A stretch of DNA of 64,000 bases from Utricularia gibba. Taxonomy: Eukaryota; Plantae; Magnoliophyta. A program made the translations under genes and the position numbers. Location: positions 1 to 64,000 of the forward strand of contig NEEC01000149.1 of the NCBI GenBank assembly GCA_002189035.1. Reading direction: 5' to 3'. Shown piece by piece: positions 1 to 32,700 of this stretch (positions are counted from its first letter, which is position 1; the number at the start of each line of letters is the position of its first letter). Below the pieces are notes generated by a model. It was not told where the DNA came from. It saw nothing but the letters and a program-made list of their open reading frames with translations, and ran no database searches.

Positions 1-219
1 AGTTGTAGCCCGGCAAATAAAGTGATGTATTTATTAACGTTCAGTTTTCGGGGCTGCCTACATGGTTTTCAAGGAACAGCTTCTCGTTTTGTGGCGGCCA
101 GTCTCGCTGGGAACTTGGTCCTTGACCCCGATTATGTATGGCTCATGAGGTCAACCGGATGCAAATCGATGAATACAATGATGCATTTGTTTAAATTACG
201 ATATCACGTGCACCCTACA

Positions 220-9936: not shown

Positions 9937-10251
9937 TGATTTTTTCAACAACTTACTTTATACTTGAGGAGGCGGTCTTGGGGGGCAAGAGGAACCGGAC
10001 AAAGGTCAGCTTAGGCTTGGGCCGAAAGTAAGTTGTAGCCCGTCAAGGAATGTGATGTATTTATTAACGTTCGGTTTTCGGGGGCTGCCTACATGGTTTT
10101 TCAAGGAACATCTTCTCGATTTTTGGCGGCTAGTCTCGTTGGGAACCTGGTCCTTGACCCCGATTCTGTATGGCTCATGGGGTCAACCGGATGCAAATCG
10201 ATGAAAAAAATGATGCATTTGTTTAAATTACGATATCACGTGCACCCTACA
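9937..10251 (+). repeat. Exemplar HOR monomer A
   Basis: Markers: ggggggcaagagg, cagcttaggcttggg, cccgtcaaggaatgtg, aacatcttctcgatt, gctagtctcgttggg, catggggtc. Confidence 0.9.
9948..10036. other. Perfect 12-bp inverted repeat acaacttacttt / aaagtaagttgt (65-nt spacer), present in A, B and C monomers
   Basis: Arms at 9948-9959 and 10025-10036 are exact reverse complements. In D, E and M the right arm is agagttagttgt. Confidence 0.85.
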
Positions 10252-10566
10252 TGATTTTTTCAACAACTTACTTTATACTTGAGGAGGTGGTCTTGGGGGG
10301 CAAGAGGAACCGGACAAAGGTCAGCATAGGCTTTGGCCGAAAGTAAGTTGTAGCCCGGCAAAGAAAAGTGATGTATTTATTAAGGTTCGGTTTTCGGGGT
10401 TGCCAACATGGTTTTTAAAGGAACAGCTTCTCGTTTTGTGGCGGCCTGTATCGCAAGGAACTTGGTCCGGGCCCCTGATTCTTTATGGCTCATGAGGACA
10501 AAAGGATGCAAATCGATGAAGAAAATGATGCATTTGTTTAAATTACGATATCACGTGCACCCTACA
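10252..10566 (+). repeat. Exemplar HOR monomer B
   Basis: Markers: gaggtggtc, cagcataggctttgg, ggcaaagaaaag, ggttgccaac, cctgtatcgcaagg, ccgggcccctg (ApaI site), gacaaaagg, gatgaagaaa. Confidence 0.9.
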
Positions 10567-10879
10567 TGATTTTTTTAACAACTTACTTTATAATTGAGGA
10601 GGCGGTCTTGGGGGCAAGAGGAACCGGACAAAGGTAAGCTTAGGCTTGGGCCGAAAGTAAGTTGTAGCCTGGCAAATAAAGTGATAAATTTATTAAAGTT
10701 CAGTTTTCGGGGGCTGCCTACATGGTTTTCAAGGAACAGCTTCTCGTTTTGTGGCGGCCAGTCTCGCTGGGAACTTGGTCCTTGACCCCGATTATGTATG
10801 GCTCGTGAGGTCAACCGGATGCAAATCGATTAAAAAAATGATGCCTTTGTTTAAATTACGATATCACGTGCACCCCACA
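10567..10879 (+). repeat. Exemplar HOR monomer C
   Basis: Markers: ttataattgagg, ggtaagcttagg (HindIII site), cctggcaaat, gtgataaatttattaaag, ggctcgtgagg, gattaaaaaaatgatgcc. Confidence 0.9.
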
Positions 10880-11194
10880 TGATTTTTTCAACAAATTACT
10901 TTATACTTAGGGAGGCGGTCTTGGGGTGCACCTAGAACGGGACAAAGGTCAGGTTTTGCTTGCACCGAGAGTTAGTTGTAGCCCGGCAAATAAAGTGATG
11001 TATTTATTAACGTTCAGTTTTCGGGGGCTGCCTACATGGTTTTTCGAGGAACAGCTTCTCGTTTTGTGGCGGCCAGTCTCGCTGGGAACTTGGTCCTTGA
11101 CCCCGATTATGTATTGCTCATGAGGTCAACCGGATGCAAATCGATGAATACAATGATGCATTTGTTTATATTACGATATGACGTGCACCCCACA
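10880..11194 (+). repeat. Exemplar HOR monomer D
   Basis: Markers: caacaaattact, cttagggagg, ggggtgcacctag, ggttttgcttgcacc, tttcgaggaac, tatgtattgc, gatgaatacaatg, tatattacgatatgacgtg. Confidence 0.9.
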
Positions 11195-11510
11195 TGATTT
11201 TTTCAACAACTTGCTTTATACTTGTGGAGGCGGTCTTGGGGTGCACCTGGAACGCGACAAAGGTCAGGTTTGGCTTGCGCCGAGAGTTAGTTGTAACACG
11301 GCAAATAAAGTGATATATTTATTAACGTTCAGTTTTCGGGGGCTGCCTACATGGTTTTTCAAGGAACAGCTTCTTGTTTTTGTGGCGGCCAGTCTCGCTG
11401 GGAACTTGGTCCTTGACCCCGATTATGTATGGCTCGTGAGGTCAACCGGATGCAATTCGATGAATACAATAATGCATTTGTTTAAATTACGATATCACGT
11501 GCACCCTACA
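11195..11510 (+). repeat. Exemplar HOR monomer E
   Basis: Markers: caacttgcttt, cttgtggagg, cacctggaacgcgac, taacacggc, gtgatatattt, cttcttgttttt, caattcgatgaatacaataatgc. Confidence 0.9.
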
Positions 11511-14500
11511 TGATTTTTTCAACAACTTACTTTATACTTGAGGAGGCGGTCTTGGGGGGCAAGAGGAACCGGACAAAGGTCAGCTTAGGCTTGGGCCGAA
11601 AGTAAGTTGTAGCCCGTCAAGGAATGTGATGTATTTATTAACGTTCGGTTTTCGGGGGCTGCCTACATGGTTTTTCAAGGAACATCTTCTCGATTTTTGG
11701 CGGCTAGTCTCGTTGGGAACCTGGTCCTTGACCCCGATTCTGTATGGCTCATGGGGTCAACCGGATGCAAATCGATGAAAAAAATGATGCATTTGTTTAA
11801 ATTACGATATCACGTGCACCCTACATGATTTTTTCAACAACTTACTTTATACTTGAGGAGGTGGTCTTGGGGGGCAAGAGGAACCGGACAAAGGTCAGCA
11901 TAGGCTTTGGCCGAAAGTAAGTTGTAGCCCGGCAAAGAAAAGTGATGTATTTATTAAGTTCGGTTTTCGGGGTTGCCAACATGGTTTTTAAAGGAACAGC
12001 TTCTCGTTTTGTGGCGGCCTGTATCGCAAGGAACTTGGTCCGGGCCCCTGATTCTTTATGGCTCATGAGGACAAAAGGATGCAAATCGATGAAAAAAATG
12101 ATGCATTTGTTTAAATTACGATATCACGTGCACCCTACATGATTTTTTTAACAACTTACTTTATAATTGAGGAGGCGGTCTTGGGGGCAAGAGGAACCGG
12201 ACAAAGGTAAGCTTAGGCTTGGGCCGAAAGTAAGTTGTAGCCTGGCAAATAAAGTGATAAATTTATTAAAGTTCAGTTTTCGGGGGCTGCCTACATGGTT
12301 TTCAAGGAACAGCTTCTCGTTTTGTGGCGGCCAGTCTCGCTGGGAACTTGGTCCTTGACCCCGATTATGTATGGCTCGTGAGGTCAACCGGATGCAAATC
12401 GATTAAAAAAAATGATGCCTTTGTTTAAATTACGATATCACGTGCACCCCACATGATTTTTTCAACAAATTACTTTATACTTAGGGAGGCGGTCTTGGGG
12501 TGCACCTAGAACGGGACAAAGGTCAGGTTTTGCTTGCACCGAGAGTTAGTTGTAGCCCGGCAAATAAAGTGATGTATTTATTAACGTTCAGTTTTCGGGG
12601 GCTGCCTACATGGTTTTTCGAGGAACAGCTTCTCGTTTTGTGGCGGCCAGTCTCGCTGGGAACTTGGTCCTTGACCCCGATTATGTATTGCTCATGAGGT
12701 CAACCGGATGCAAATCGATGAATACAATGATGCATTTGTTTATATTACGATATGACGTGCACCCCACATGATTTTTTCAACAACTTGCTTTATACTTGTG
12801 GAGGCGGTCTTGGGGTGCACCTGGAACGCGACAAAGGTCAGGTTTGGCTTGCGCCGAGAGTTAGTTGTAACACGGCAAATAAAGTGATATATTTATTAAC
12901 GTTCAGTTTTCGGGGGCTGCCTACATGGTTTTTCAAGGAACAGCTTCTTGTTTTTGTGGCGGCCAGTCTCGCTGGAACTTGGTCCTTGACCCCGATTATG
13001 TATGGCTCGTGAGGTCAACCGGATGCAATTCGATGAATACAATAATGCATTTGTTTAAATTACGATATCACGTGCACCCTACATGATTTTTTCAACAACT
13101 TACTTTATACTTGAGGAGGCGGTCTTGGGGGGCAAGAGGAACCGGACAAAGGTCAGCTTAGGCTTGGGCCGAAAGTAAGTTGTAGCCCGTCAAGGAATGT
13201 GATGTATTTATTAACGTTCGGTTTTCGGGGCTGCCTACATGGTTTTTCAAGGAACATCTTCTCGATTTTTGGCGGCTAGTCTCGTTGGGAACCTGGTCCT
13301 TGACCCCGATTCTGTATGGCTCATGGGGTCAACCGGATGCAAATCGATGAAAAAAATGATGCATTTGTTTAAATTACGATATCACGTGCACCCTACATGA
13401 TTTTTTCAACAACTTACTTTATACTTGAGGAGGTGGTCTTGGGGGGCAAGAGGAACCGGACAAAGGTCAGCATAGGCTTTGGCCGAAAGTAAGTTGTAGC
13501 CCGGCAAAGAAAAGTGATGTATTTATTAAGGTTCGGTTTTCGGGGTTGCCAACATGGTTTTTAAAGGAACAGCTTCTCGTTTTGTGGCGGCCTGTATCGC
13601 AAGGAACTTGGTCCGGGCCCCTGATTCTTTATGGCTCATGAGGACAAAAGGATGCAAATCGATGAAGAAAATGATGCATTTGTTTAAATTACGATATCAC
13701 GTGCACCCTACATGATTTTTTTAACAACTTACTTTATAATTGAGGAGGCGGTCTTGGGGGCAAGAGGAACCGGACAAAGGTAAGCTTAGGCTTGGGCCGA
13801 AAGTAAGTTGTAGCCTGGCAAATAAAGTGATAAATTTATTAAAGTTCAGTTTTCGGGGGCTGCCTACATGGTTTTCAAGGAACAGCTTCTCGTTTTGTGG
13901 CGGCCAGTCTCGCTGGGAACTTGGTCCTTGACCCCGATTATGTATGGCTCGTGAGGTCAACCGGATGCAAATCGATTAAAAAAAATGATGCCTTTGTTTA
14001 AATTACGATATCACGTGCACCCCACATGATTTTTTCAACAAATTACTTTATACTTAGGGAGGCGGTCTTGGGGTGCACCTAGAACGGGACAAAGGTCAGG
14101 TTTTGCTTGCACCGAGAGTTAGTTGTAGCCCGGCAAATAAAGTGATGTATTTATTAACGTTCAGTTTTCGGGGCTGCCTACATGGTTTTTCGAGGAACAG
14201 CTTCTCGTTTTGTGCGGCCAGTCTCGCTGGGAACTTGGTCCTTGACCCCGATTATGTATTGCTCATGAGGTCAACCGGATGCAAATCGATGAATACAATG
14301 ATGCATTTGTTTATATTACGATATGACGTGCACCCCACATGATTTTTTCAACAACTTGCTTTATACTTGTGGAGGCGGTCTTGGGGTGCACCTGGAACGC
14401 GACAAAGGTCAGGTTTGGCTTGCGCCGAGAGTTAGTTGTAACACGGCAAATAAAGTGATATATTTATTAACGTTCAGTTTTCGGGGGCTGCCTACATGGT

Positions 14501-15123
14501 TTTTCAAGGAACAGCTTCTTGTTTTTGTGGCGGCCAGTCTCGCTGGGAACTTGGTCCTTGACCCCGATTATGTATGGCTCGTGAGGTCAACCGGATGCAA
14601 TTCGATGAATACAATAATGCATTTGTTTAAATTACGATATCACGTGCACCCTACATGATTTTTTCAACAACTTACTTTATACTTGAGGAGGCGGTCTTGG
14701 GGGCAAGAGGAACCGGACAAAGGTCAGCTTAGGCTTGGGCCGAAAGTAAGTTGTAGCCCGTCAAGGAATGTGATGTATTTATTAACGTTCGGTTTTCGGG
14801 GGCTGCCTACATGGTTTTTCAAGGAACATCTTCTCGATTTTTGGCGGCTAGTCTCGTTGGGAACCTGGTCCTTGACCCCGATTCTGTATGGCTCATGGGT
14901 CAACCGGATGCAAATCGATGAAAAAAATGATGCATTTGTTTAAATTACGATATCACGTGCACCCTACATGATTTTTTCAACAACTTACTTTATACTTGAG
15001 GAGGTGGTCTTGGGGGCAAGAGGAACCGGACAAAGGTCAGCATAGGCTTTGGCCGAAAGTAAGTTGTAGCCCGGCAAAGAAAAGTGATGTATTTATTAAG
15101 GTTCGGTTTTCGGGTTGCCAACA

Positions 15124-16529
15124 TGGTTTTTCAAGGAACAACTTCTCATTTTGTGGCGGCCAGTCTCGCTGGGAACTTGGTCCTTGACCCCGATTATGTA
15201 TTGCTCATGAGGTCAACCGGATGCAAATCGATTAAAAAAAAATGATGCCTTTGTTTAAATTACGATATCACGTGCACCCCACATGATTTTTTCAACAACT
15301 TGCTTTATACTTGTGAGGCGGTCTTGGGGTGCACCTGGAACGGACAAAGGTCAGGTTGGCTTGCGCCGAGAGTTAGTTGTAACCGGCAAATAAAGTGATG
15401 TATTTATTAACGTTCAGTTTTCGGGGGCTGCCTACATGGTTTTTCAAGGAACAGCTTCTCGTTTTGTGGCGGCCAGTCTCGCTGGGAACTTGGTCCTTGA
15501 CCCCGATTCTGTATGGCTCATGAGGTCAACCGGATGCAAATCGATTAAAAAAATGATGCCTTTGTTTAAATTACGATATCACGTGCACCCCACATGATTT
15601 TTTCAACAACTTACTTTATACTTGAGGAGGCGGTCTTGGGGTGCACCTAGAACGGGACAAAGGTCAGGTTTGGCTTGCGCCGAGAGTTAGTTGTAGCCGG
15701 CAAATAAAGTGATGTATTTATTAACGTTCAGTTTTTGGGGGCTGCCTACATGGTTTTTCAAGAACAGCTTCTCGTTTTGTGGCGGCCAGTCTCGCTGGGA
15801 ACTTGGTCCTGGACCCCGATTCTGTATGGCTCATGAGGTCAACCGGATGGAAATCGATTAAAAAATGATGCCTTTCTTTAAATTACGATATCACGTGCAC
15901 CCACATGATTTTTTCAACAACTTACTTTATACTTGAGGAGGCGGTCTTGGGGTGCACCTAGAACGGGACAAAGGTCAGGTTTGGCTTGCGCCGAGAGTTA
16001 GTTGTAGCTCGGCAAATAAAGTGATGTATTTATTAACGTTCAGTTTTCGGGGGCCCTACATGGTTTTTCAAGGAACAGCTTCTCATTTGTGGCGGCCAGT
16101 CTCGCTGGGAACTTGGTCCTTGACCCCGATTCTGTATGGCTCATGAGGTCAACCGGATGCAAATCGATTAAAAAAATGATGCTTTTGTTTAAATTACGAT
16201 ATCACGTGCACCCCACATGATTTTTTCAACAACTTACTTTATACTTGAGGAGGCGGTCTTGGGGTGCACCTAGAACGGGACAAAGGTCAGGTTTGGCTTG
16301 CGCCGAGAGTTAGTTGTAGCTCGGAAAATAAAGTGATGTATTTATTAACGTTCAGTTTTCGGGGGCTGCCTACATGGTTTTTCAAGGAACAGCTTCTCGT
16401 TTTGTGGCGGCCAGTCTCGCTGGGAACTTGGTCCTTGACCCGATTATGTATGCTCATGAGGTCAACCGGATGCAAATCGATTAAAAAATGATGCCTTTGT
16501 TTAAATTACGATATCACGTGCACCCCACA
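15124..16529 (+). repeat. First block of M-type (non-HOR) monomers, ~4.5 units
   Basis: After gccaaca (15117-15123, last B marker) the sequence follows the M pattern. Monomer starts are 15284, 15595, 15906 and 16218; the 15284 unit has an E-like 5' end. Confidence 0.85.
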
Positions 16530-19013
16530 TGATTTTTCAACAACTTGCTTTATACTTGTGGAGGCGGTCTTGGGGTGCACCTGGAACGGGACAAAGGTCA
16601 GGTTTGGCTTGCGCCGAAAGTTAGTTGTAACACGGCAAATAAAGTGATATATTTATTAACGTTCAGTTTTCGGGGGCTGCCTACATGGTTTTTCAAGGAA
16701 CAGCTTCTTGTTTTTGTGGCGGCCAGTCTCGCTGGGAACTTGGTCCTTGACCCCGATTATGTATGGCTCGTGAGGTCAACCGGATGCAATTCGATGAATA
16801 CAATAATGCATTTGTTTAAATTACGATATCACGTGCACCCTACATGATTTTTTCAACAACTTACTTTATACTTGAGGAGGCGGTCTTGGGGGGCAAGAGG
16901 AACCGGACAAAGGTCAGCTTAGGCTTGGGCCGAAAGTAAGTTGTAGCCGGCAAAATGTGATGTATTTATTAACGTTCAGTTTTCGGGGGCTGCCTATGGT
17001 TTTTCAAGGAACAGCTTCTCGTTTTTGGCGGCCAGTCTCGTTGGGAACTTGGTCCTTGACCCCGATTCTGTATGGCTCATGGGGTCAACCGGATGCAAAT
17101 CGATTAAAAAAATGATGCATTTGTTTAAATTACGATATCACGTGCACCCACATGATTTTTTCAACAACTTACTTTATACTTGAGGAGGTGGTCTTGGGGG
17201 CAAGAGGAACGGACAAAGGTCAGCATAGGCTTGGCCGAAGTAAGTTGTAGCCCGGCAAAGAAAAGTGATGTATTTATTAACGTTCGGTTTTCGGGGGCCA
17301 ACATGGTTTTTAAGGAACAGCTTCTCGTTTTGTGGCGGCCTGTATCGCAAGGAACTTGGTCCGGGCCCGATTCTTTATGGCTCATGAGGACAAAAGGATG
17401 CAAATCGATGAAGAAATGATGCATTTGTTTAAATTACGATATCACGTGCACCCTACATGATTTTTTTAAACAACTTACTTTATAATTGAGGAGGCGGTCT
17501 TGGGGGCAAGAGGAACCGGACAAAGGTCAGCTTAGGCTTGGGCCGAAAGTAAGTTGTAGCCGGCAAATAAAGTGATAAATTTATTAAAGTTCAGTTTTCG
17601 GGGGCTGCCTACATGGTTTTCAAGGAACAGCTTCTCGTTTTGTGGCGGCCAGTCTCGCTGGGAACTTGGTCCTTGACCCGATTATGTATGGCTCATGAGG
17701 TCAACCGGATGCAAATCGATTAAAAAAAATGATGCCTTTGTTTAAATTACGATATCACGTGCACCCCACATGATTTTTTCAACAAATTACTTTATACTTA
17801 GGGAGGCGGTCTTGGGGTGCACCTAGAACGGGACAAAGGTCAGGTTTTGCTTGCCCGAGAGTTAGTTGTAGCCCGGCAAATAAAGTGATGTATTTATTAA
17901 CGTTCAGTTTTCGGGGGCTGCCTACATGGTTTTTCAGGAACAGCTTCTCGTTTTGTGGCGGCCAGTCTCGCTGGGAACTTGGTCCTTGACCCCGATTATG
18001 TATTGCTCATGAGGTCAACCGGATGCAAATCGATGAAAACAATGATGCATTTGTTTAATTACGATATGACGTGCACCCCACATGATTTTTTCAACAACTT
18101 GCTTTATACTTGTGGAGGCGGTCTTGGGGTGCACCTGGAACGCGACAAAGGTCAGGTTTGGCTTGCGCCGAGAGTTAGTTGTAACACGGCAAATAAAGTG
18201 ATATATTTATTAACGTTCAGTTTTCGGGGGCTGCCTACATTTTTTCAAGGAACAGCTTCTTGTTTTTGTGGCGGCCAGTCTCGCTGGGAACTTGGTCCTT
18301 GACCCCGATTATGTATGGCTCATGAGGTCAACCGGATGCAATTGATGAAACAAATGATGCATTTGTTTAAATTACGATATCACGTGCACCCTACATGATT
18401 TTTTCAACAACTTACTTTATACTTGAGGAGGCGGTCTTGGGGCAAGAGGAACCGGACAAAGGTCAGCTTTGGCTTGGGCCGAAAGTAAGTTGTAGCCCGG
18501 CAAAATGTGATGTATTTATTAACGTTCGGTTTTGGGGGCTGCCTACATGGTTTTTCAAGGAACAGCTTCTCGTTTTTGGCGGCCAGTCTCGCTGGGAACT
18601 TGGTCCTTGACCCCGATTCTGTATGGCTCATGAGGTCAACCGGATGCAAATCGATGAAAAAAATGATGCATTTGTTTAAATTACGATATCACGTGCACCC
18701 ACATGATTTTTTCAACAACTTACTTTATACTTGAGGAGGCGGTCTTGGGGGCAAGAGGAACGGACAAAGGTCAGGTTTGGCTTGGCCGAGAGTTAGTTGT
18801 AGCCCGGCAAAAAAAGTGATGTATTTATTAACGTTCAGTTTTCGGGGTTGCCAACATGGTTTTTCAAGGAACAGCTTCTCGTTTTGTGGCGGCCAGTCTC
18901 GCTGGAACTTGGTCCTTGACCCGATTCTGTATGGCTCATGAGGTCAACCGGATGCAAATCGATTAAAAAAAATGATGCCTTTGTTTAAATTACGATATCA
19001 CGTGCACCCCACA
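16530..19013 (+). repeat. Second HOR island E-A-B-C-D-E-A-B(5' half), degenerate and out of phase with the main HOR
   Basis: Starts: 16530 (E), 16845 (A), 17153 (B), 17458 (C), 17771 (D), 18083 (E), 18396 (A-like), 18704 (B-like 5' part, with ggttgccaac at ~18847). Many 1-bp deletions and progressively more M alleles. Confidence 0.85.
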
Positions 19014-22000
19014 TGATTTTTTCAACAACTTACTTTATACTTGAGGAGGCGGTCTTGGGGTGCACCTGGAACGGGACAAAGGTCAGGTTTGGCTTGCGCC
19101 GAGAGTTAGTTGTAGCGGAAATAAAGTGATGTATTTATTAACGTTCAGTTTTCGGGGGCTGCCTACATGGTTTTTCAAGGAACAGCTTCTCGTTTTGTGG
19201 CGGCCAGTCTCGCTGGGAACTTGGTCCTTGACCCGATTATGTATGCTCATGAGGTCAACCGATTCGATTAAAAATGATGCCTTTGTTTAAATTACGATAT
19301 CACGTGCACCCCACATGATTTTTTCAACAACTTACTTTATACTTGAGGAGGCGGTCTTGGGGTGCACCTAGAACGGGACAAAGGTCAGGTTTGGCTTGCG
19401 CCGAGAGTTAGTTGTAGCTCGGCAAATAAAGTGATGTATTTATTAACGTTCAGTTTTTGGGGGCTGCCTACATGGTTTTTCAAGGAACAGCTTCTCGTTT
19501 TGTGGCGGCCAGTCTCGCTGGGAACTTGGTCCTTGACCCCGATTCTGTATGGCTCATGAGGTCAACCGGATGGAAATCGATTAAAGAAAATGATGCTTTC
19601 TTTAAATTACGATATCACGTGCACCCACATGATTTTTTCAACAACTTACTTTATACTTGAGGAGGCGGTCTTGGGGTGCACCTAGAACGGGACAAAGGTC
19701 AGGTTTGGCTTGCCGAGAGTTAGTTGTAGCTCGGAAAAATAAAGTGATGTATTTATTAACGTTCAGTTTTCGGGGGCTGCTACATGGTTTTTCAAGGAAC
19801 AGCTTCTCGTTTTTGTGGCGGCCAGTCTCGCTGGGAACTTGGTCCTTGACCCCGATTATGTATGGCTCATGAGGTCAACCGGATGCAAATCGATTAAAAA
19901 AATGATGCCTTTGTTTAAATTACGATATCACGTGCACCCCACATGATTTTTTCAACAACTTACTTTATACTTGAGGAGGCGGTCTTGGGGTGCACCTGGA
20001 ACGGGACAAAGGTCAGGTTTGGCTTGCGCCGAGAGTTAGTTGTAGCTCGGAAAAATAAAGTGATGTATTTATTAACGTTCAGTTTTTCGGGGGCTGCCTA
20101 CATGGTTTTTCAAGGAACAGCTTCTCGTTTTGTGGCGGCCAGTCTCGCTGGAAACTTGGTCCTTGACCCCGATTCTGTATGGCTCATGAGGTCAACCGGA
20201 TGCAAATCGATTAAAAAAATGATGCTTTTGTTTAAATTACGATATCACGTGCACCCACATGATTTTTTCAACAACTTACTTTATACTTGAGGAGGCGGTC
20301 TTGGGGTGCACCTAGAACGGGACAAAGGTCAGGTTTGGCTTGCGCCGAGAGTTAGTTGTAGCTCGGCAAAATAAAGTGATGTATTTATTAACGTTCAGTT
20401 TTTGGGGGCTGCCTACATGGTTTTTCAAGGAACAGCTTCTCGTTTTGTGGCGGCCAGTCTCGCTGGGAACTTGGTCCTTGACCCCGATTCTGTATGGCTC
20501 ATGAGGTCAACCGGATGCAAATCGATTAAAAAAAATGATGCCTTTGTTTAAATTACGATATCACGTGCACCCCACATGATTTTTTCAACAACTTACTTTA
20601 TACTTGAGGAGGCGGTCTTGGGGTGCACCTAGAACGGGACAAAGGTCAGGTTTGGCTTGCGCCGAGAGTTAGTTGTAGCTCGGCAAATAAAGTGATGTAT
20701 TTATTAACGTTCAGTTTTTGGGGGCTGCCTACATGGTTTTTCAAGGAACAGCTTCTCGTTTTTGGCGGCCAGTCTCGCTGGGAACTTGGTCCTTGACCCC
20801 GATTATGTATTGCTCATGAGGTCAACCGGATGCAAATTGATTAAAAAAAATGATGCCTTTTTTAAATTACGATATCACGTGCACCCCACATGATTTTTTC
20901 AACAACTTACTTTATACTTGAGGAGGCGGTCTTGGGGTGCACCTAGAACGGGACAAAGGTCAGGTTTGGCTTGCGCCGAGAGTTAGTTGTAGCTCGGAAA
21001 ATAAAGTGATGTATTTATTAACGTTCAGTTTTCGGGGGCTGCCTACATGGTTTTTCAAGGAACAGCTTCTCGTTTTGTGGCGGCCAGTCTCGCTGGGAAC
21101 TTGGTCCTTGACCCCGATTCTGTATGGCTCATGAGGTCAACCGGATGCAAATCGATTAAAAAAATGATGCCTTTGTTTAAATTACGATATCACGTGCACC
21201 CCACATGATTTTTTCAACAACTTACTTTATACTTGAGGAGGCGGTCTTGGGGTGCACCTAGAACGGGACAAAGGTCAGGTTTGGCTTGCGCCGAGAGTTA
21301 GTTGTAGCTCGGCAAAATAAAGTGATGTATTTTTAACGTTCAGTTTTTGGGGGCTGCCTACATGGTTTTTAAGGAACAGCTTCTCGTTTTGTGGCGGCCA
21401 GTCTCGCTGGGAACTTGGTCCTTGACCCCGATTCTGTATGGCTCATGAGGTCAACCGGATGCAAATCGATTAAAAAAATGATGCCTTTGTTTAATTACGA
21501 TATCACGTGCACCCCACATGATTTTTTCAACAACTTACTTTATACTTGAGGAGGCGGTCTTGGGGTGCACCTAGAACGGGACAAAGGTCAGGTTTGGCTT
21601 GCGCCGAGAGTTAGTTGTAGCTCGGCAAATAAAGTGATGTATTTATTAACGTTCAGTTTTCGGGGGCTGCCTACATGGTTTTTCAAGGAACAGCTTCTCG
21701 TTTTGTGGCGGCCAGTCTCGCTGGGAACTTGGTCCTTGACCCGATTCTGTATGGCTCATGAGGTCAACCGGATGCAAATCGATTAAAAAAATGATGCCTT
21801 TGTTTAAATTACGATATCACGTGCACCCCACATGATTTTTTCAACAACTTACTTTATACTTGAGGAGGCGGTCTTGGGGTGCACCTAGAACGGGACAAAG
21901 GTCAGGTTTGGCTTGCGCCGAGAGTTAGTTGTAGCTCGGCAAATAAAGTGATGTATTTATTAACGTTCAGTTTTTGGGGGCTGCCTACATGGTTTTTCAA

Positions 22001-23393
22001 GGAACAGCTTCTCGTTTTGTGGCGGCCAGTCTCGCTGGGAACTTGGTCCTTGACCCCGATTCTGTATGGCTCATGAGGTCAACCGGATGCAAATCGATTA
22101 AAGAAAATGATGCCTTTCTTTAAATTACGATATCACGTGCACCCACATGATTTTTCAACAACTTACTTTATACTTGAGGAGGCGGTCTTGGGGTGCACCT
22201 AGAACGGGACAAAGGTCAGGTTTGGCTTGCGCCGAGAGTTAGTTGTAGCTCGGCAAATAAAGTGATGTATTTATTAACGTTCAGTTTTCGGGGTGCCTAC
22301 ATGGTTTTTCAAGGAACAGCTTCTCGTTTTGTGGCGGCCAGTCTCGCTGGGAACTTGGTCCTTGACCCCGATTCTGTATGGCTCATGAGGTCAACCGGAT
22401 GCAAATTGATTAAAAAAAATGATGCTTTTGTTTAAATTACGATATCACGTGCACCCCACATGATTTTTTCAACAACTTACTTTATACTTGAGGAGGCGGT
22501 CTTGGGGTGCACCTAGAACGGGACAAAGGTCAGGTTTGGCTTGCGCCGAGAGTTAGTTGTAGCTCGGAAAATAAAGTGATGTATTTATTAACGTTCAGTT
22601 TTCGGGGGCTGCCTACATGGTTTTTCAAGGAACAGCTTCTCGTTTTGTGGCGGCCAGTCTCGCTGGGAACTTGGTCCTTGACCCCGATTATGTATGGCTC
22701 ATGAGGTCAACCGGATGCAAATTGATTAAAAAAAATGATGCCTTTGTTTAAATTACGATATCACGTGCACCCCACATGATTTTTTCAACAACTTACTTTA
22801 TACTTGAGGAGGCGGTCTTGGGGTGCACCTAGAACGGGACAAAGGTCAGGTTTGGCTTGCGCCGAGAGTTAGTTGTAGCTCGGCAAATAAAGTGATGTAT
22901 TTATTAACGTTCAGTTTTTGGGGGCTGCCTACATGGTTTTTCAAGGAACAGCTTCTCGTTTTGTGGCGGCCAGTCTCGCTGGGAACTTGGTCCTTGACCC
23001 CGATTCTGTATGGCTCATGAGGTCAACCGGATGCAAATCGATTAAAAAATGATGCCTTTGTTTAAATTACGATATCACGTGCACCCACATGATTTTTTCA
23101 ACAACTTACTTTATACTTGAGGAGGCGGTCTTGGGGTGCACCTAGAACGGGACAAAGGTCAGGTTTGGCTTGCGCCGAGAGTTAGTTGTAGCTCGGCAAA
23201 ATAAAGTGATGTATTTATTAACGTTCAGTTTTTGGGGGCTGCCTACATGGTTTTTCAAGGAACAGCTTCTCGTTTTGTGGCGGCCAGTCTCGCTGGGAAC
23301 TTGGTCCTTGACCCCGATTCTGTATGGCTCATGAGGTCAACCGGATGCAAATTGATTAAAAAAATGATGCCTTTGTTTAAATTACGATATCAC

Positions 23394-23457
23394 GTGCACC
23401 CCACATGATTTTTTCAACAACTTACTTTATACTTGAGGAGGCGGTCTTGGGGTGCAC
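23394..23457. other. Perfect 10-bp inverted repeat gtgcacccca / tggggtgcac across the monomer junction (44-nt spacer), present at junctions into D, E and M monomers
   Basis: Arms at 23394-23403 and 23448-23457 are exact reverse complements. Confidence 0.85.
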
Positions 23458-23720
23458 CTAGAACGGGACAAAGGTCAGGTTTGGCTTGCGCCGAGAGTTA
23501 GTTGTAGCTCGGCAAATAAAGTGATGTATTTATTAACGTTCAGTTTTCGGGGGCTGCCTACATGGTTTTTCAAGGAACAGCTTCTCGTTTTGTGGCGGCC
23601 AGTCTCGCTGGGAACTTGGTCCTTGACCCCGATTCTGTATGGCTCATGAGGTCAACCGGATGCAAATCGATTAAAAAAATGATGCCTTTGTTTAAATTAC
23701 GATATCACGTGCACCCCACA
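23406..23720 (+). repeat. Exemplar M monomer (315 bp) = half H1 (23406-23562, 157 bp) + half H2 (23563-23720, 158 bp)
   Basis: H1 and H2 align end to end with one gap at about 85/157 identities (hand count). Examples: ttgaggaggc/ttgtggcggc, gtttggct/gtatggct, aataaagtgatg/aaaaaaatgatg, gcctacatggttttt/ccccacatgattttt. Confidence 0.9.
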
Positions 23721-26700
23721 TGATTTTTTCAACAACTTACTTTATACTTGAGGAGGCGGTCTTGGGGTGCACCTAGAACGGGACAAAGGTCAGGTTTGGC
23801 TTGCGCCGAGAGTTAGTTGTAGCTCGGCAAATAAAGTGATGTATTTATTAACGTTCAGTTTTTTGGGGGCTGCCTACATGGTTTTTCAAGGAACAGCTTC
23901 TCGTTTTGTGGCGGCCAGTCTCGCTGGGAACTTGGTCCTTGACCCCGATTCTGTATGGCTCATGAGGTCAACCGGATGCAAATTGATTAAAAAAATGATG
24001 CTTTCTTTAAATTACGATATCACGTGCACCCACATGATTTTTTCAACAACTTACTTTATACTTGAGGAGGCGGTCTTGGGGTGCACCTAGAACGGGACAA
24101 AGGTCAGGTTTGGCTTGCGCCGAGAGTTAGTTGTAGCTCGGCAAATAAAGTGATGTATTTATTAACGTTCAGTTTTCGGGGGCTGCCTACATGGTTTTTC
24201 AAGGAACAGCTTCTCGTTTTGTGGCGGCCAGTCTCGCTGGGAACTTGGTCCTTGACCCCGATTCTGTATGGCTCATGAGGTCAACCGGATGCAAATCGAT
24301 TAAAAAAATGATGCCTTTGTTTAAATTACGATATCACGTGCACCCCACATGATTTTTTCAACAACTTACTTTATACTTGAGGAGGCGGTCTTGGGGTGCA
24401 CCTAGAACGGGACAAAGGTCAGGTTTGGCTTGCGCCGAGAGTTAGTTGTAGCTCGGCAAAAAAAGTGATGTATTTATTAACGTTCAGTTTTGGGGGCTGC
24501 CTACATGGTTTTTCAAGGAACAGCTTCTCGTTTTGTGGCGGCCAGTCTCGCTGGGAACTTGGTCCTTGACCCCGATTCTGTATGGCTCATGAGGTCAACC
24601 GGATGCAAATTGATTAAAAAAATGATGCCTTTGTTTAAATTACGATATCACGTGCACCCCACATGATTTTTTCAACAACTTACTTTATACTTGAGGAGGC
24701 GGTCTTGGGGTGCACCTAGAACGGGACAAAGGTCAGGTTTGGCTTGCGCCGAGAGTTAGTTGTAGCTCGGCAAATAAAGTGATGTATTTATTAACGTTCA
24801 GTTTTTGGGGGCTGCCTACATGGTTTTTCAAGGAACAGCTTCTCGTTTTGTGGCGGCCAGTCTCGCTGGGAACTTGGTCCTTGACCCCGATTCTGTATGG
24901 CTCATGAGGTCAACCGGATGCAAATTGATTAAAAAAATGATGCCTTTGTTTAAATTACGATATCACGTGCACCCCACATGATTTTTTCAACAACTTACTT
25001 TATACTTGAGGAGGCGGTCTTGGGGTGCACCTAGAACGGGACAAAGGTCAGGTTTGGCTTGCGCCGAGAGTTAGTTGTAGCTCGGCAAATAAAGTGATGT
25101 ATTTATTAACGTTCAGTTTTTGGGGGCTGCCTACATGGTTTTTCAAGGAACAGCTTCTCGTTTTGTGGCGGCCAGTCTCGCTGGGAACTTGGTCCTTGAC
25201 CCCGATTATGTATGGCTCATGAGGTCAACCGGATGCAAATCGATTAAAAAAATGATGCCTTTGTTTAAATTACGATATCACGTGCACCCCACATGATTTT
25301 TTCAACAACTTACTTTATACTTGGGAGGCGGTCTTGGGTGCACCTAGAACGGGACAAAGGTCAGGTTTGGCTTGCGCCGAGAGTTAGTTGTAGCTCGGAA
25401 AATAAAGTGATGTATTTATTAACGTTCAGTTTTCGGGGGCTGCCTACATGGTTTTTCAAGGAACAGCTTCTCGTTTTGTGGCGGCCAGTCTCGCTGGGAA
25501 CTTGGTCCTTGACCCCGATTCTGTATGGCTCATGAGGTCAACCGGATGCAAATCGATTAAAAAAATGATGCCTTTCTTTTAAATTACGATATCACGTGCA
25601 CCCCACATGATTTTTTCAACAACTTACTTTATACTTGAGGAGGCGGTCTTGGGGTGCACCTAGAACGGGACAAAGGTCAGGTTTGGCTTGCGCCGAGAGT
25701 TAGTTGTAGCTCGGCAAATAAAGTGATGTATTTATTAACGTTCAGTTTTCGGGGGCTGCCTACATGGTTTTTCAAGGAACAGCTTCTCGTTTTGTGGCGG
25801 CCAGTCTCGCTGGGAACTTGGTCCTTGACCCCGATTCTGTATGGCTCATGAGGTCAACCGGATGCAAATCGATTAAAAAAAATGATGCCTTTGTTTAAAT
25901 TACGATATCACGTGCACCCCACATGATTTTTTCAACAACTTACTTTATACTTGAGGAGGCGGTCTTGGGGTGCACCTAGAACGGGACAAAGGTCAGGTTT
26001 GGCTTGCGCCGAGAGTTAGTTGTAGCTCGGCAAATAAAGTGATGTATTTATTAACGTTCAGTTTTTGGGGGCTGCCTACATGGTTTTTCAAGGAACAGCT
26101 TCTCGTTTTGTGGCGGCCAGTCTCGCTGGGAACTTGGTCCTTGACCCCGATTCTGTATGGCTCATGAGGTCAACCGGATGGAAAATCGATTAAAAAAATG
26201 ATGCCTTTTTTAAATTACGATATCACGTGCACCCCACATGATTTTTTCAACAACTTACTTTATACTTGAGGAGGCGGTCTTGGGGTGCACCTAGAACGGG
26301 ACAAAGGTCAGGTTTGGCTTGCGCCGAGAGTTAGTTGTAGCTCGGCAAATAAAGTGATGTATTTATTAACGTTCAGTTTTCGGGGGCTGCCTACATGGTT
26401 TTTCAAGAAACAGCTTCTCGTTTTGTGGCGGCCAGTCTCGCTGGGAACTTGGTCCTTGACCCCGATTCTGTATGGCTCATGAGGTCAACCGGATGCAAAT
26501 CGATTTTGTGAGCGGCCAGTCTCTTGCTAAAACGTTGGTCCTTGACCCCGATTCTGTACATGGCTCATGAGGTCAACCGGATGCAAATCATGATTAAAAA
26601 ATACTTGCATTACTTTAAAGGACGATCTTGGCACACACCCCACAACGGACAAAGGTAACTTACTTTGCGCCGAGAGAGGCGGTCTTGGGGTGCACCTAGA

Positions 26701-29700
26701 ACGGGACAAAGGTCAGGTTTGGCTTGCGCCGAGAGTTAGTTGTAGCACGGCAAATAAAGTGATGTATTTATTAACGTTCAGTTTTGGGGGCTGCCTACAT
26801 GGTTTTTCAAGGAACAGCTTCTCGTTTTGTGGCGGCCAGTCTCGCTGGGAACTTGGTCCTGGACCCCGATTCTGTATGGCTCATGAGGTCAACCGGATGG
26901 AAATCGATTAAAAAAATGATGCTTTTTAAATTACGATATCACGTGCACCCACATGATTTTTTCAACAACTTACTTTATACTTGAGGAGGCGGTCTTGGGG
27001 TGCACCTAGAACGGGACAAGGTCAGGTTTGGCTTGCGCCGAGAGTTAGTTGTAGCCGGCAAATAAAGTGATGTATTTATTAACGTTCAGTTTTGGGGGCT
27101 GCCTACATGGTTTTTCAAGGAACAGCTTCTCGTTTTGTGGCGGCCAGTCTCGCTGGGAACTTGGTCCTTGACCCCGATTCTGTATGGCTCATGAGGTCAA
27201 CCGGATGCAAATCGATTAAAAAAATGATGCCTTTGTTTAAATTACGATATCACGTGCACCCACATGATTTTTTCAACAACTTACTTTATACTTGGGAGGC
27301 GGTCTTGGGGTGCACCTAGAACGGGACAAAGGTCAGGTTTGGCTTGCGCGAGAGTTAGTTGTAGCTCGGAAAATAAGTGATGTATTTATTAACGTTCAGT
27401 TTTCGGGGGCTGCCTACATGGTTTTTCAAGAACAGCTTCTCGTTTTGTGGCGGCCAGTCTCGCTGGGAACTTGGTCCTTGACCCCGATTCTGTATGGCTC
27501 ATGAGGTCAACCGGATGGAAATCGACTTTTTTATTACTATGTGCAGGAGGAGGCGGTCTTGGGTGCACTAGAACGGGACAAAGGTCAGGTTTGGCTTGCG
27601 CGAGAGTTAGTTGTAGCTCGGAAATAAAGTGATGTATTTATTAACGTTCAGTTTTCGGGGCTGCCTACATGGTTTTTCAAGGAACAGCTTCTCGTTTTGT
27701 GGCGGCCAGTCTCGCTGGGAACTTGGTCCTTGACCCCGATTCTGTATGGCTCATGAGGTCAACCGGATGGAAATCGATTAAAAAATGATGCCTTTTTAAA
27801 TTACGATATCACGACCCCACATGATTTTTTCAACAACTTACTTTATACTTGTCTTGGGGTGCACCTAGAACGGGACAAAGGTCAGGTTTGGCTTGCGCCG
27901 AGAGTTAGTTGTAGCTCGGCAAATAAAGTGATGTATTTATTAACGTTCAGTTTTCGGGGGCTGCCTACATGGTTTTTCAAGAACAGCTTCTCGTTTGTGG
28001 CGGCCAGTCTCGCTGGAAACTTGGTCCTTGACCCCGATTCTGTATGGCTCATGAGGTCAACCGGATGCAAATCGATTAAAAAAATGATGCCTTTGTTTAA
28101 ATTACGATATCACGTGCACCCCACATGATTTTTTTCAACAACTTACTTTATACTTGAGGAGGCGGTCTTGGGGTGCACCTAGAACGGGACAAAGGTCAGG
28201 TTTGGCTTGCGCCGAGAGTTAGTTGTAGCTCGGCAAATAAAGTGATGTATTTATTAACGTTCAGTTTTTGGGGGCTACCTACATGGTTTTTCAAGAACAG
28301 CTTCTCGTTTTGTGGCGGCCAGTCTCGCTGGAACTTGGTCCTTGACCCCGATTCTGTATGGCTCATGAGGTCAACCGGATGCAAATTGATTAAAAAAATG
28401 ATGCCTTTCTTTAAATTACGATATCACGTGCACCCCACATGATTTTTTCAACAACTTACTTTATACTTGAGGAGGCGGTCTTGGGGTGCACCTAGAACGG
28501 GACAAAGGTCAGGTTTGGCTTGCGCCGAGAGTTAGTTGTAGCCGGCAAATAAAGTGATGTATTTATTAACGTTCAGTTTTCGGGGCTGCCTACATGGTTT
28601 TTCAAGGAACAGCTTCTCGTTTGTGGCGGCCAGTCTCGCTGGGAACTTGGTCCTTGACCCCGATTCTGTATGGCTCATGAGGTCAACCGGATGCAAATCG
28701 ATTAAAAAAATGATGCCTTTGTTTAAATTACGATATCACGTGCACCCCACATGATTTTTTCAACAACTTACTTTATACTTGGGAGGCGGTCTTGGGGTGC
28801 ACCTAGAACGGGACAAAGGTCAGGTTTGGCTTGCGCCGAGAGTTAGTTGTAGCTCGGAAAATAAAGTGATGTATTTATTAACGTTCAGTTTTGGGGGCTG
28901 CCTACATGGTTTTTCAAGGAACAGCTTCTCGTTTTGTGGCGGCCAGTCTCGCTGGGAACTTGGTCCTTGACCCCGATTCTGTATGGCTCATGAGGTCAAC
29001 CGGATGGAAATTGATTAAAAAAATGATGCCTTTTTTAAATACGATATCACGTGCACCCCACATGATTTTTCAACAACTTACTTTATACTTGAGGAGGCGG
29101 TCTTGGGGTGCACCTAGAACGGGACAAAGGTCAGGTTTGGCTTGCGCCGAGAGTTAGTTGTAGCTCGGCAAATAAAGTGATGTATTTATTAACGTTCAGT
29201 TTTTGGGGGCTGCCTACATGGTTTTTCAAGAACAGCTTCTCGTTTTGTGGCGGCCAGTCTCGCTGGGAACTTGGTCCTTGACCCCGATTCTGTATGGCTC
29301 ATGAGGTCAACCGGATGGAAATTGATTAAAAAAATGATGCCTTTCTTTAAATACGATATCACGTGCACCCCACATGATTTTTTCAACAACTTACTTTATA
29401 CTTGAGGAGGCGGTCTTGGGGTGCACCTAGAACGGGACAAAGGTCAGGTTTGGCTTGCGCCGAGAGTTAGTTGTAGCCGGCAAATAAAGTGATGTATTTT
29501 AACGTTCAGTTTTCGGGGGCTGCCTACATGGTTTTTCAAGGAACAGCTTCTCGTTTTGTGGCGGCCAGTCTCGCTGGCTTGGTCCTTGACCCCGATTCTG
29601 TATGGCTCATGAGGTCAACCGGATGCAAATCGATTAAAAAAATGATGCCTTTGTTTAAATTACGATATCACGTGCACCCCACATGATTTTTTCAACAACT

Positions 29701-32700
29701 TACTTTATACTTGAGGAGGCGGTCTTGGGTGCACCTAGAACGGGACAAAGGTCAGGTTTGGCTTGCGCCGAGAGTTAGTTGTAGCTCGGCAAATAAAGTG
29801 ATGTATTTATTAACGTTCAGTTTTTGGGGGCTGCCTACATGGTTTTCAAGAACAGCTTCTCGTTTTTGTGGCGGCCAGTCTCGCTGGGAACTTGGTCCTT
29901 GACCCCGATTCTGTATGGCTCATGAGGTCAACCGGATGCAAATTGATTAAAAAAATGATGCCTTTCTTTAAATTACGATATCACGTGCACCCCACATGAT
30001 TTTTTCAACAACTTACTTTATACTTGAGGAGGCGGTCTTGGGGTGCACCTAGAACGGGACAAAGGTCAGGTTTGGCTTGCGCCGAGAGTTAGTTGTACTC
30101 GGCAAATAAAGTGATGTATTTATTAACGTTCAGTTTTCGGGGGCTGCCTACATGGTTTTTCAAGGAACAGCTTCTCGTTTTGTGGCGGCCAGTCTCGCTG
30201 GGAACTTGGTCCTTGACCCCGATTCTGTATGGCTCATGAGGTCAACCGGATGCAAATCGATTAAAAAATGATGCCTTTGTTTAAATTACGATATCACGTG
30301 CACCCCACATGATTTTTTCAACAACTTACTTTATACTTGGGAGGCGGTCTTGGGGTGCACCTAGAACGGGACAAAGGTCAGGTTTGGCTTGCGCCGAGAG
30401 TTAGTTGTAGCTCGGAAAATAAAGTGATGTATTTATTAACGTTCAGTTTTCGGGGCTGCCTACATGGTTTTTCAAGGAACAGCTTCTCGTTTTGTGGCGG
30501 CCAGTCTCGCTGGGAACTTGGTCCTTGACCCCGATTATGTATGCTCATGAGGTCAACCGGATGCAAATTGATTAAAAAATGATGCCTTTGTTTAAATTAC
30601 GATATCACGTGCACCCCACATGATTTTTTCAACAACTTACTTTATACTTGAGGAGGCGGTCTTGGGGTGCACCTAGAACGGGACAAAGGTCAGGTTTGGC
30701 TTGCGCCGAGAGTTAGTTGTAGCTCGGCAAATAAAGTGATGTATTTATTAACGTTCAGTTTTGGGGGCTGCCTACATGGTTTTTCAAGGAACAGCTTCTC
30801 GTTTTTGTGGCGGCCAGTCTCGCTGGGAACTTGGTCCTTGACCCCGATTATGTATGCTCATGAGGTCAACCGGATGCAAATTGATTAAAAAAATGATGCC
30901 TTTGTTTAAATTACGATATCACGTGCACCCCACATGATTTTTTCAACAACTTACTTTATACTTGAGGAGGCGGTCTTGGGGTGCACCTAGAACGGGACAA
31001 AGGTCAGGTTTGGCTTGCGCCGAGAGTTAGTTGTAGCTCGGAAAATAAAGTGATGTATTTATTAACGTTCAGTTTTCGGGGGCTGCCTACATGGTTTTTC
31101 AAGGAACAGCTTCTCGTTTTGTGGCGGCCAGTCTCGCTGGGAACTTGGTCCTGACCCCGATTCTGTATGGCTCATGAGGTCAACCGGATGCAAATCGATT
31201 AAAAAAATGATGCCTTTTTTAAATTACGATATCACGTGCACCCCACATGATTTTTTCAACAACTTACTTTATACTTGAGGAGGCGGTCTTGGGTGCACCT
31301 AGAACGGACAAAGGTCAGGTTTGGCTTGCGCCGAGAGTTAGTTGTAGCTCGGAAAATAAAGTGATGTATTAACGTTCAGTTTTGGGGGCTGCCTACATGG
31401 TTTTTCAAGGAACAGCTTCTCGTTTTGTGGCGGCCAGTCTCGCTGGGAACTTGGTCCTTGACCCCGATTCTGTATGGCTCATGAGGTCAACCGGAAATCG
31501 ATTAAAAAAATGATGCCTTTTTAAATTACGATATCACGTGCACCCCACATGATTTTTTCAACAACTTACTTTATACTTGAGGAGGCGGTCTTGGGTGCAC
31601 CTGAACGGGACAAAGGTCAGGTTTGGCTTGCGCCGAGAGTTAGTTGTAGCTCGGAAATAAAGTGATGTATTTATTAACGTTCAGTTTTTGGGGGCTACCT
31701 ACATGGTTTTTCAAGGAACAGCTTCTCGTTTTGTGGCGGCCAGTCTCGCTGGGAACTTGGTCCTTGACCCCGATTATGTATGCTCATGAGGTCAACCGGA
31801 TGCAAATTGATTAAAAAAATGATGCCTTTTTAAATTACGATATCACGTGCACCCCACATGATTTTTTCAACAACTTACTTTATACTTGAGGAGGCGGTCA
31901 ACCGGATGCAAATCGATTAAAAAAATGTTTGTTTAAATTACGATATCACGTGCACCCCACATGATTTTTTCAACAACTTACTTTATACTTGAGGAGGCGG
32001 TCTTGGGGTGCACCTGGAACGGACAAAGGTCAGGTTTGGCTTGCGCGAGAGTTAGTTGTAGCTCGGAATGTGATGTATTTATTAACGTTCAGTTTTGGGG
32101 GCTGCCTACATGGTTTTTCAAGGAACGTTTTGTGGCGGCCAGTCTCGCTGGGAACTTGGTCCTTGACCCCGATTCTGTATGGCTCATGAGGTCAACCGGA
32201 TGCAAATCGATTAAAAAAAATGATGCTTTGTTTAAATTACGATATCACGTGCACCCCACATGATTTTTTCAACAACTTTATACTTGAGGAGGCGGTCTTG
32301 GGGTGCACCTGGAACGGGACAAAGGTCAGGGCTTTGCGAGAGTTAGTTGTAAAAAAAAGTGATGTATTTATTAACGTTCAGTTTTGGGGCTGCCTACATG
32401 GTTTTTCAAGGAACAGCTTCTCGTTTTGTGGCGGCCAGTCTCGCTGGAACTTGGTCCCCGATTCTGTATGGCTCATGAGGTCAACCGGATGCAAATCGAT
32501 TAAAAAATGATGCCTTTGTTTAAATTACGATATCACGTGCACCCCACATGATTTTTTCAACAACTTACTTTATACTTGAGGAGGCGGTCTTGGGTGCACG
32601 GGACAAAGGTCAGGTTTGGCTTGCGCCGAGAGTTAGTTGTAGCCGGAAATAAAGTGATGTATTTATTAACGTTCAGTTTTGGGGGCTGCCTACATGGTTT

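What the first reader, a model, noticed from the sequence alone, without database searches (positions are those of the whole stretch)
23406..23720. The 315-bp monomer is a hidden ancient dimer of ~157-bp subunits
Seen: splitting the M monomer after gctgcctaca gives halves of 157 and 158 bp that align over their full length with a single gap. About 85/157 positions are identical (64/119 ungapped over the last 119 bp), versus roughly 25-27% expected by chance. The motif cc(t/c)acatg(a/g)ttttt and the A/T tracts recur at the half period. Established: many centromeric satellites have nucleosome-sized units (rice CentO ~155, maize CentC ~156, primate alpha ~171). Inference: a ~157-bp mononucleosomal satellite dimerised long ago and has since been homogenised as a 315-bp unit. 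The array then has three tiers: 157, 315 and 1573 bp (ten subunits).
Basis: partly seen in the sequence, partly recalled or inferred. Interest (0 to 1): 0.75.

Follow-up and report, generated by a model that had tools for sequence, protein, structure and literature searches.

The report
Plant satellite unit is an old dimer
The 315-letter unit of this plant's long tandem repeat really consists of two very old, much-diverged copies of a roughly 157-letter unit, a common way for such repeats to grow and not a new kind of thing.

Summary
Observation confirmed. The whole 64-kb window is one head-to-tail satellite array of about 204 monomers of about 314 bp. The monomer at 23406-23720 equals the window consensus.

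- **Not chance:** gapped score 10 against -35 +/- 6 for dinucleotide shuffles (z 7.4, 0/2000).
- **Best lag:** 157/158 is the best circular lag, 0.397 against a best-lag null maximum of 0.365 (0/3000).
- **Spread:** the similarity covers the whole subunit, crosses both junctions and survives 5-bp block shuffles (z 6.4).

An old dimer is therefore well supported. JC distance between the halves is about 0.71, against 0.07-0.17 between present monomer types. Homogenisation now works at 315 bp: halves are 46-58% alike in every monomer, and there is no sign of exchange between them.

Not shown: nucleosome or centromere function, and any living 157-bp relative. The 1573-bp tier exists only in 1-15200; the cited monomer lies in a monomeric domain.

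At least eight first-reader notes report the same split on other contigs of this genome; none listed has a follow-up. This is a new member of a known kind and of low interest.

The parts
1..64000 (+). One uninterrupted head-to-tail satellite array, about 204 monomers of about 314 bp, all in one orientation, with no foreign insertion
   Evidence: TRF period 314, 205 copies. blastn tiling with the monomer gave 210 HSPs, 197 of them full length, all on the plus strand; the largest untiled gap is 30 bp.
23406..23720 (+). The 315-bp monomer of the finding; identical to the majority consensus of 197 monomers
   Evidence: the monomer equals the consensus.
23406..23562 (+). Subunit H1 (157 bp)
23563..23720 (+). 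Subunit H2 (158 bp); 85 identities with H1, one 1-bp gap
23399..23417 (+). Boundary box at the H2-to-H1 junction (CCCCACATGATTTTTTCAA); low variability among monomers
   Evidence: Mean minor-allele frequency is 0.030 against 0.041 overall.
23556..23574 (+). Boundary box at the H1-to-H2 junction (GCCTACATGGTTTTTCAAG); among the least variable stretches
   Evidence: Mean minor-allele frequency is 0.021 against 0.041 overall.
1..15200 (+). Domain with a 5-monomer higher-order repeat (about 1573 bp, ten subunits); the five monomer types are 85-94% alike
   Evidence: Monomer-lag identity is 0.984 at lags 5 and 10 against 0.877-0.899 at other lags. Base autocorrelation has a peak at 1573.
15200..64000 (+). 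Monomeric domains without a higher-order period (all lags 94-96%)
43421..43879 (+). A 1.5-mer made of H1, an H2/H1 chimera and H2. The register is shifted by one subunit (158 bp), with the junction in or within about 6 bp of the H1/H2 homology register, just after the boundary box
   Evidence: blastn q1-173 followed by q21-315; sequence; crossover models; TRF row 43441-43736.

Best explanation
The 315-bp monomer descends from two neighbouring units of an older satellite of about 157 bp.

Shown:
- H1 and H2 are direct, collinear, full-length paralogues at 54% identity with one 1-bp indel.
- Together they make up the monomer with nothing left over.
- Homology continues across both junctions.

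Inferred:
- In a 157-bp array, two adjacent variants were amplified together by unequal crossing-over or segmental amplification, in a dimer register.
- Recombination and conversion then kept copies alike only at the 315-bp register.
- The two halves drifted apart to about 0.71 substitutions per site.

The same process is visible one level up today. In window 1-15200, five monomer types that are 85-94% alike are homogenised together as a 1573-bp unit.

At 54% identity the halves are now too different for regular exchange. Only one subunit-sized register slip is seen in about 204 monomers, next to the best-kept shared block.

The array is most likely heterochromatic satellite DNA, possibly centromeric. 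That, and any link of 157 bp to nucleosome spacing, is inference from size and organisation only.
For: - Exact reproduction of the alignment.
- z 7.4 against dinucleotide shuffles.
- Lag 157/158 is the single outlier among all circular lags and beats the best lag of 3000 shuffles.
- Similarity is spread along the whole subunit, holds at every rotation and holds without the boundary motif.
- It survives shuffles that keep local composition.
- Mismatches are 29 transitions and 43 transversions, near saturation, as expected for an old split.
- H1/H2 identity is 0.46-0.58 in all 193 monomers tested, while monomers are about 92.5% alike on average and 94-96% within the monomeric domains.
- There is no excess of partner-base alleles.
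- There is no deeper sub-period inside the subunits: half-subunit alignments give z -1.6 and -0.2.
- A present-day higher-order repeat in the same array shows the mechanism at work.
- One in-register subunit slip lies at 43421-43879.
- First readers saw the same 157/313-316 split on other contigs of this genome. These notes are unchecked.
- Plant satellites cluster at 150-180 bp and 300-370 bp (PMC5615363; PMC2820488).
Against: - No living 157-bp monomeric relative was found, in this window or in any collection I could reach. The ancestral 157-bp array is therefore inferred, not observed.
- A single tandem duplication inside a non-satellite progenitor, amplified later as a 315-bp unit, would give the same H1/H2 alignment. 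Only the exact two-subunit content and the homologous junctions argue against it.
- There is no ~10-bp WW periodicity and no chromatin data, so the nucleosome link is unsupported.
- The one subunit slip could be coincidence: three irregular junctions in the window, about 0.12 chance that one lands within 6 bp of the half period.
Confidence: 0.75

Rival explanations
1. One-off internal duplication. A tandem duplication of about 157 bp arose once inside a non-satellite sequence, such as a transposable element, an rDNA spacer subrepeat or unique DNA. The pair was only later amplified as a 315-bp satellite. There never was a 157-bp satellite.
For: This gives the same H1/H2 paralogy. No 157-bp array was found anywhere. 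Other satellites of this genome are said to derive from 5S rDNA, so satellites born from other sequence classes occur here (unchecked notes).
Against: The monomer holds exactly 2.0 subunits. Homology crosses both junctions, with 11/18 and 11/20 identities on either side of the boundary. Every rotation scores 3-10 against a null of -35. An amplified one-off duplication would normally carry flanking non-duplicated sequence or a truncated copy. There is no Rfam match.
Confidence: 0.15
2. Similarity without common descent. The two halves resemble each other because both are shaped by the same constraint, such as A/T tracts and a protein-binding box placed at nucleosome spacing. They would not be copies of one sequence.
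For: The A/T profile recurs at lag 157 with r 0.57. The boundary box is the best-kept shared block and is little variable among monomers. Sites that differ between the five HOR monomer types show a half-period pattern.
Against: Base-level identity far exceeds what regional composition gives: the 5-bp block shuffle has a null of 54.5 +/- 4.7 against 85 observed. The core without the box is still at z 5.2. Collinearity over 157 bp with a single 1-bp indel is what descent predicts and convergence does not.
Confidence: 0.05
3. Chance or low-complexity artefact. The half-period match is a selected best phase in an AT-tract-rich sequence.
For: Optimally gapped shuffles also reach about 78 identities.
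Against: 0 of 2000 shuffles reach the score. 0 of 3000 reach the best-lag identity, a test that is free of phase choice. The peak is also visible in the raw 64-kb autocorrelation at lag 157: 0.337 against a baseline of 0.255.
Confidence: 0.01

Closest known systems
Plant satellites of the 300-370 bp size class built from two diverged subrepeats, for example Beta pAv34 with subrepeats SR1 and SR2 (Dechyeva and Schmidt 2006, recalled from memory, not read here)
   Same: The monomer is about twice the common 150-180 bp size (size classes: PMC5615363; PMC2820488). It consists of two direct, diverged subrepeats and is homogenised as the double unit.
   Different: There is no sequence relationship that I could test. 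pAv34 is subtelomeric, whereas the chromosomal place of this satellite is unknown. The halves here are more diverged (54% identity) than I recall for most described cases.
Primate alpha satellite: dimeric units and multimeric higher-order repeats of 171-bp monomers (dimers positioning pairs of CENP-A nucleosomes: PMC4410388, abstract seen)
   Same: A nucleosome-sized base unit. Adjacent diverged units are homogenised together. A further higher-order tier (5-mer) sits next to a monomeric domain in the same array.
   Different: This is a plant with an unrelated sequence. The two subunits are far more diverged than alpha-satellite monomers within a repeat (about 54% against roughly 60-80%, the latter from memory). 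No CENP-B-box-like function has been shown, and centromere association is untested.
Genlisea nigrocaulis 161-bp centromere-associated tandem repeat Gn7c161 (PMC4542322)
   Same: Its size is close to the 157-bp subunit. It would be a relevant relative if the plant is a member of Lentibulariaceae, which is only my unverified inference.
   Different: Neither published primer of Gn7c161 matches the window with up to 3 mismatches. There is no evidence of homology.

Membership tests
Satellite DNA (long head-to-tail tandem array) | Many tandem copies of one unit in one orientation over tens of kilobases | tested here: met
   About 204 monomers fill all 64 kb, all on the plus strand.
Composite (dimer-derived) satellite monomer | Two direct subrepeats of equal length that together cover the whole monomer | tested here: met
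   157 + 158 bp, one 1-bp gap, homology across both junctions, every rotation scores 3-10.
Composite (dimer-derived) satellite monomer | Subrepeat similarity above composition-preserving controls | tested here: met
   z 7.4 against dinucleotide shuffles. Best-lag test 0/3000. 5-bp block shuffle z 6.4.
Composite (dimer-derived) satellite monomer | Homogenisation at the double unit, not at the subunit | tested here: met
   Monomers are about 92.5% alike on average (94-96% in the monomeric domains), while H1/H2 identity is 46-58% in every monomer. There is no partner-base allele excess.
Composite (dimer-derived) satellite monomer | Existence of monomeric (157-bp period) relatives in the same or related genomes | not testable with these tools
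   No plant genome collection is on hand. The metagenome, viral and prokaryote scans and the ORF-protein word search found no relative.
Higher-order repeat organisation (alpha-satellite-like) | Copies n monomers apart are much more alike than neighbours | tested here: met
   Lag 5 gives 98.4% against 88-90% at other lags, but only in window 1-15200. The rest is monomeric.
Centromeric satellite | Association with CENH3 chromatin, or a cytological position at primary constrictions | not testable with these tools
   There are no chromatin or FISH data. The window has no flanking sequence.
Nucleosome-positioning repeat | About 10-bp periodicity of WW dinucleotides, or measured nucleosome phasing | tested here: not met
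   WW power at 9.5-11 bp is 0.02-0.26 against a shuffle mean of 0.72. Measured phasing cannot be tested.

The most novel reading that the evidence does not exclude
The 157-bp period may still be read by the cell. Each subunit would keep a quiet edge of about 50 bp around the shared box CCYACATGRTTTTTCAA and a free-to-vary core. The array would then position two alternating kinds of nucleosome, or bind a box-specific protein, every 157 bp, like alpha-satellite dimers and CENP-B boxes but in a plant.

The hint comes from the 74 sites that differ between the five HOR monomer types. They fall in a half-period pattern:
- The smoothed autocorrelation is top-ranked at lag 157 (r 0.39-0.55 raw, 0.43-0.59 after removing the A/T effect).
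- Homologous H1/H2 sites vary together 13 times against about 8.7 expected, p 0.048.

The signal is weak, is absent in the younger monomeric domains, and the box itself is no better kept than a 54% alignment allows.
Probability: 0.12. Interest if true: 0.55.

Novelty: new member of a known kind. Interest (0 to 1): 0.27.

Why it matters
It gives a clean, statistically secured example of a satellite caught at two stages of one growth process. An old dimerisation is now almost erased (54% identity between halves). A young 5-mer higher-order repeat sits in the same array. This helps to annotate the plant's main 313-316-bp satellite correctly, with a base unit of about 157 bp. It also tells anyone doing CENH3 or MNase work on this species which period to look for. 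It does not change what is known about how satellites evolve.

Tried and rejected
- **Metagenome scan:** I used a half-period pattern (the box, 130-160 bases, the box). It returned 120 loci, almost all with single chance matches. blastn of the consensus against all of them found nothing beyond the motif itself.
- **L052:** this locus holds an unrelated 173-bp tandem repeat that happens to carry the box. Its unit scores -18 against H1/H2, inside the null of -23 +/- 3.
- **Protein word search:** a satellite ORF was used to try to reach satellite-derived 'proteins' in other assemblies. No candidate was found.
- **Viral and prokaryote scans:** an exact 23-mer present in 131 monomers of the window had no match in either collection.
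- **Rfam:** no match on 2 kb at E up to 1.
- **Single-strand DNA folding:** z -0.9, nothing unusual.
- **Genlisea 161-bp repeat primers:** no match.
- **Ongoing H1/H2 gene conversion:** partner-base alleles are not enriched, 0.10-0.16 against 0.16-0.17 for other bases.
- **Half-period correlation of variability over all monomers:** none, Spearman 0.11, p 0.18.
- **Deeper sub-periods in the subunit:** none.
- **~10-bp WW periodicity:** none.
- **Literature:** no paper describing this satellite was found. The Utricularia gibba long-read genome paper is not held.
- **CentO/CentC comparison:** not made, because I hold no tool-given sequence for them.

Full report
**What is there**

The whole window is one satellite array. 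TRF reports a period of 314 bp with 205 copies over 1-64000. Tiling the window with the monomer of the finding gave 210 blastn HSPs, all on the plus strand. Of these, 197 are full length, and no untiled gap exceeds 30 bp. The monomer at 23406-23720 is letter for letter the majority consensus of the 197 full monomers. G+C is 45.7% and CpG is not depleted (observed/expected 0.92).

Earlier notes of this scan say the genome is a plant. One note describes a mitochondrial TAA-to-GTT swap behind 'a famous pair of building blocks in a key power-unit protein'. From memory, this recalls the Cys-Cys motif of COX1 in Utricularia. I take that only as an unverified hint about the species, and nothing below depends on it. 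The contig is not human.

**Check of the observation**

Cutting after GCTGCCTACA gives H1 (23406-23562, 157 bp) and H2 (23563-23720, 158 bp). The global alignment has one 1-bp gap and 85 identical columns. The last 119 bp ungapped give 64 matches.

The figure '85 of 157 against 25%' is not a fair comparison. Optimally gapped shuffles also reach about 78 identities, by using many gaps. The alignment score is the right statistic.

- The score is 10, against -34.9 +/- 6.1 for dinucleotide-preserving shuffles. That is z 7.4, with none of 2000 as good.
- A test free of any choice of phase agrees. Circular ungapped identity of the monomer with itself is 0.397 at lags 157 and 158.
- The mean over all lags is 0.253 +/- 0.028, and the next best real lag is 0.308.
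- The best lag of 3000 shuffled monomers averaged 0.319 and never exceeded 0.365.
- The peak also shows in the raw 64-kb autocorrelation: 0.337 at lag 157 against a baseline of 0.255, with echoes at 470 and 785.

**Motif or full-length homology?**

The homology is full length.

- Matches are even along the alignment, 8 to 12 per 20 columns.
- The three thirds give z 4.7, 2.2 and 6.6.
- The core without the boundary motif gives z 5.2.
- Every rotation of the split point scores 3 to 10, against a null near -35.
- Shuffling one half within blocks of 5 bp keeps A/T tracts and local composition in register. It leaves a null of 54.5 +/- 4.7 identities against 85 observed (z 6.4, 0 of 5000).

The resemblance is therefore base by base, not only a shared layout of A/T tracts. 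That layout is shared too: the A/T profile autocorrelation is 0.57 at lag 157 and at most 0.25 elsewhere. There is no deeper period inside the subunits.

**Age and unit of homogenisation**

- The 72 mismatches are 29 transitions and 43 transversions, close to saturation.
- The Jukes-Cantor distance for p = 0.46 is about 0.71 substitutions per site (my arithmetic).
- The five monomer types of the higher-order repeat differ by p = 0.06-0.15.
- Monomers in the monomeric domains differ by about 0.05.
- H1/H2 identity is 0.46-0.58 in all 193 monomers that could be split.
- Where H1 and H2 differ, rare alleles do not favour the partner's base.

The halves therefore no longer exchange sequence, and the 315-bp unit is what is kept uniform.

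**Array-derived dimer or one-off duplication?**

The monomer holds exactly two subunits. The homology runs through both junctions: the box CCYACATGRTTTTT straddles the H1-to-H2 and the H2-to-H1 boundary. This is what a dimer lifted out of a 157-bp array gives.

A single duplication inside some other sequence, amplified later, would normally carry non-duplicated flank or a truncated copy. I therefore favour the array-derived dimer, but I could not observe the ancestor.

**The third tier**

The 5-monomer repeat is real. Monomers five apart are 98.4% alike, against 88-90% for other distances. This holds only in 1-15200. Beyond that, all distances give 94-96%. 'Three tiers' describes a quarter of the window, not the array as a whole.

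First readers report other higher-order periods of the same family on other contigs: 630, 1253 and 1880 bp. I did not check these.

At 43421-43879 the array reads H1, then the first 16 or so bases of H2, then H1 again from about position 17-23, then H2. This shifts the register by 158 bp. Crossover models place the junction in the H1/H2 register or within about 6 bp of it, right after the shared box.

This fits a rare exchange between the two halves at their best-kept block. With three irregular junctions in the window (offsets 88, 103 and 158 bp), the chance of one landing there is about 0.12. It is an anecdote, not a proof.

**A weak hint of a subunit-level constraint**

The five higher-order monomer types differ at 74 sites. 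These sites are placed with a half-period pattern.

- The smoothed variability autocorrelation is top-ranked at lag 157, also after removing the effect of A/T content (r 0.43-0.59, first of 111-123 lags).
- Homologous sites of H1 and H2 vary together 13 times against about 8.7 expected (one-sided p 0.048).
- Both subunits are quiet at their edges and variable at positions 46-90.
- The younger monomeric domains show nothing of the kind.
- The box itself, 10 of 11 identical, is no better kept than a 54% alignment allows (my binomial estimate).

I report this as the basis of the novel case only.

**Function**

Nothing in the sequence speaks for more than ordinary satellite DNA.

- No Rfam family matches.
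- Single-strand folding is ordinary (z -0.9).
- There is no ~10-bp WW periodicity.
- ORFs of 70-133 codons are what a 315-bp unit, divisible by three, throws up by chance; every frame of the consensus has 3 to 7 stops per monomer.

Centromeric position and nucleosome phasing remain untested.

**Relatives and literature**

- One unrelated 173-bp repeat carrying the box (L052) does not align with H1 or H2.
- A word search with a satellite ORF found no candidate.
- Viral and prokaryote collections hold no copy of a 23-mer present in 131 monomers here.
- The 161-bp centromere-associated repeat of Genlisea nigrocaulis is close in size, but its published primers do not match.
- I found no paper on this satellite.

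Reviews state that plant and animal satellites cluster at 150-180 bp and 300-360 bp (PMC5615363), or at 160-180 bp and 320-370 bp in plants (PMC2820488). Monomers made of two diverged subrepeats have been described before, for example Beta pAv34 (from memory).

**Verdict**

The functional gloss is untested and the kind of thing is known. The scan has noted the same split on at least eight other stretches of this genome. None of the notes listed carries a follow-up.

Noticed in passing
window 1-15200: The 74 sites that differ between the five monomer types of the 5-mer higher-order repeat show a 157-bp half-period pattern: quiet subunit edges and a variable core at subunit positions 46-90. The smoothed autocorrelation is top-ranked at lag 157, and homologous sites co-vary with p 0.048. 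The pattern is absent in the monomeric domains.
   Followed up: partly
window 43421-43879: A 1.5-mer (H1, H2/H1 chimera, H2) with a register shift of one subunit (158 bp). The second H1 copy also carries small deletions of 6-7 bp.
   Followed up: yes
window 26421-26589 and 31790-32002: Two partial internal duplications of 88 and 103 bp inside monomers, not at the half period (TRF rows; blastn tiling).
   Followed up: no
window 59684-60535 and 63269-63835: Runs of short monomers (276-291 bp, 86-92% identity) with several scattered deletions of 3-20 bp at different places in each copy. These are either local decay of the array or lower consensus quality of a noisy long-read assembly. Indels make up 4-5% of TRF columns overall.
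   Followed up: partly
window about 15000-15400: The higher-order repeat domain passes into a monomeric domain without any break in the monomer register. Other first readers noted this junction as well.
   Followed up: no
whole window: There is strand asymmetry: G 16278 against C 12485, and T 19571 against A 15666 on the plus strand. CpG is not depleted (observed/expected 0.92), yet CpG positions are more variable among monomers (0.067 against 0.039).
   Followed up: no
L052:131-1850: A metagenome contig (Ga0307517_10081923) holds an unrelated 173-bp tandem repeat, probably eukaryotic. Each unit carries the 14-mer ACATGGTTTTTCAA by chance, and there is no further similarity to H1 or H2.
   Followed up: yes
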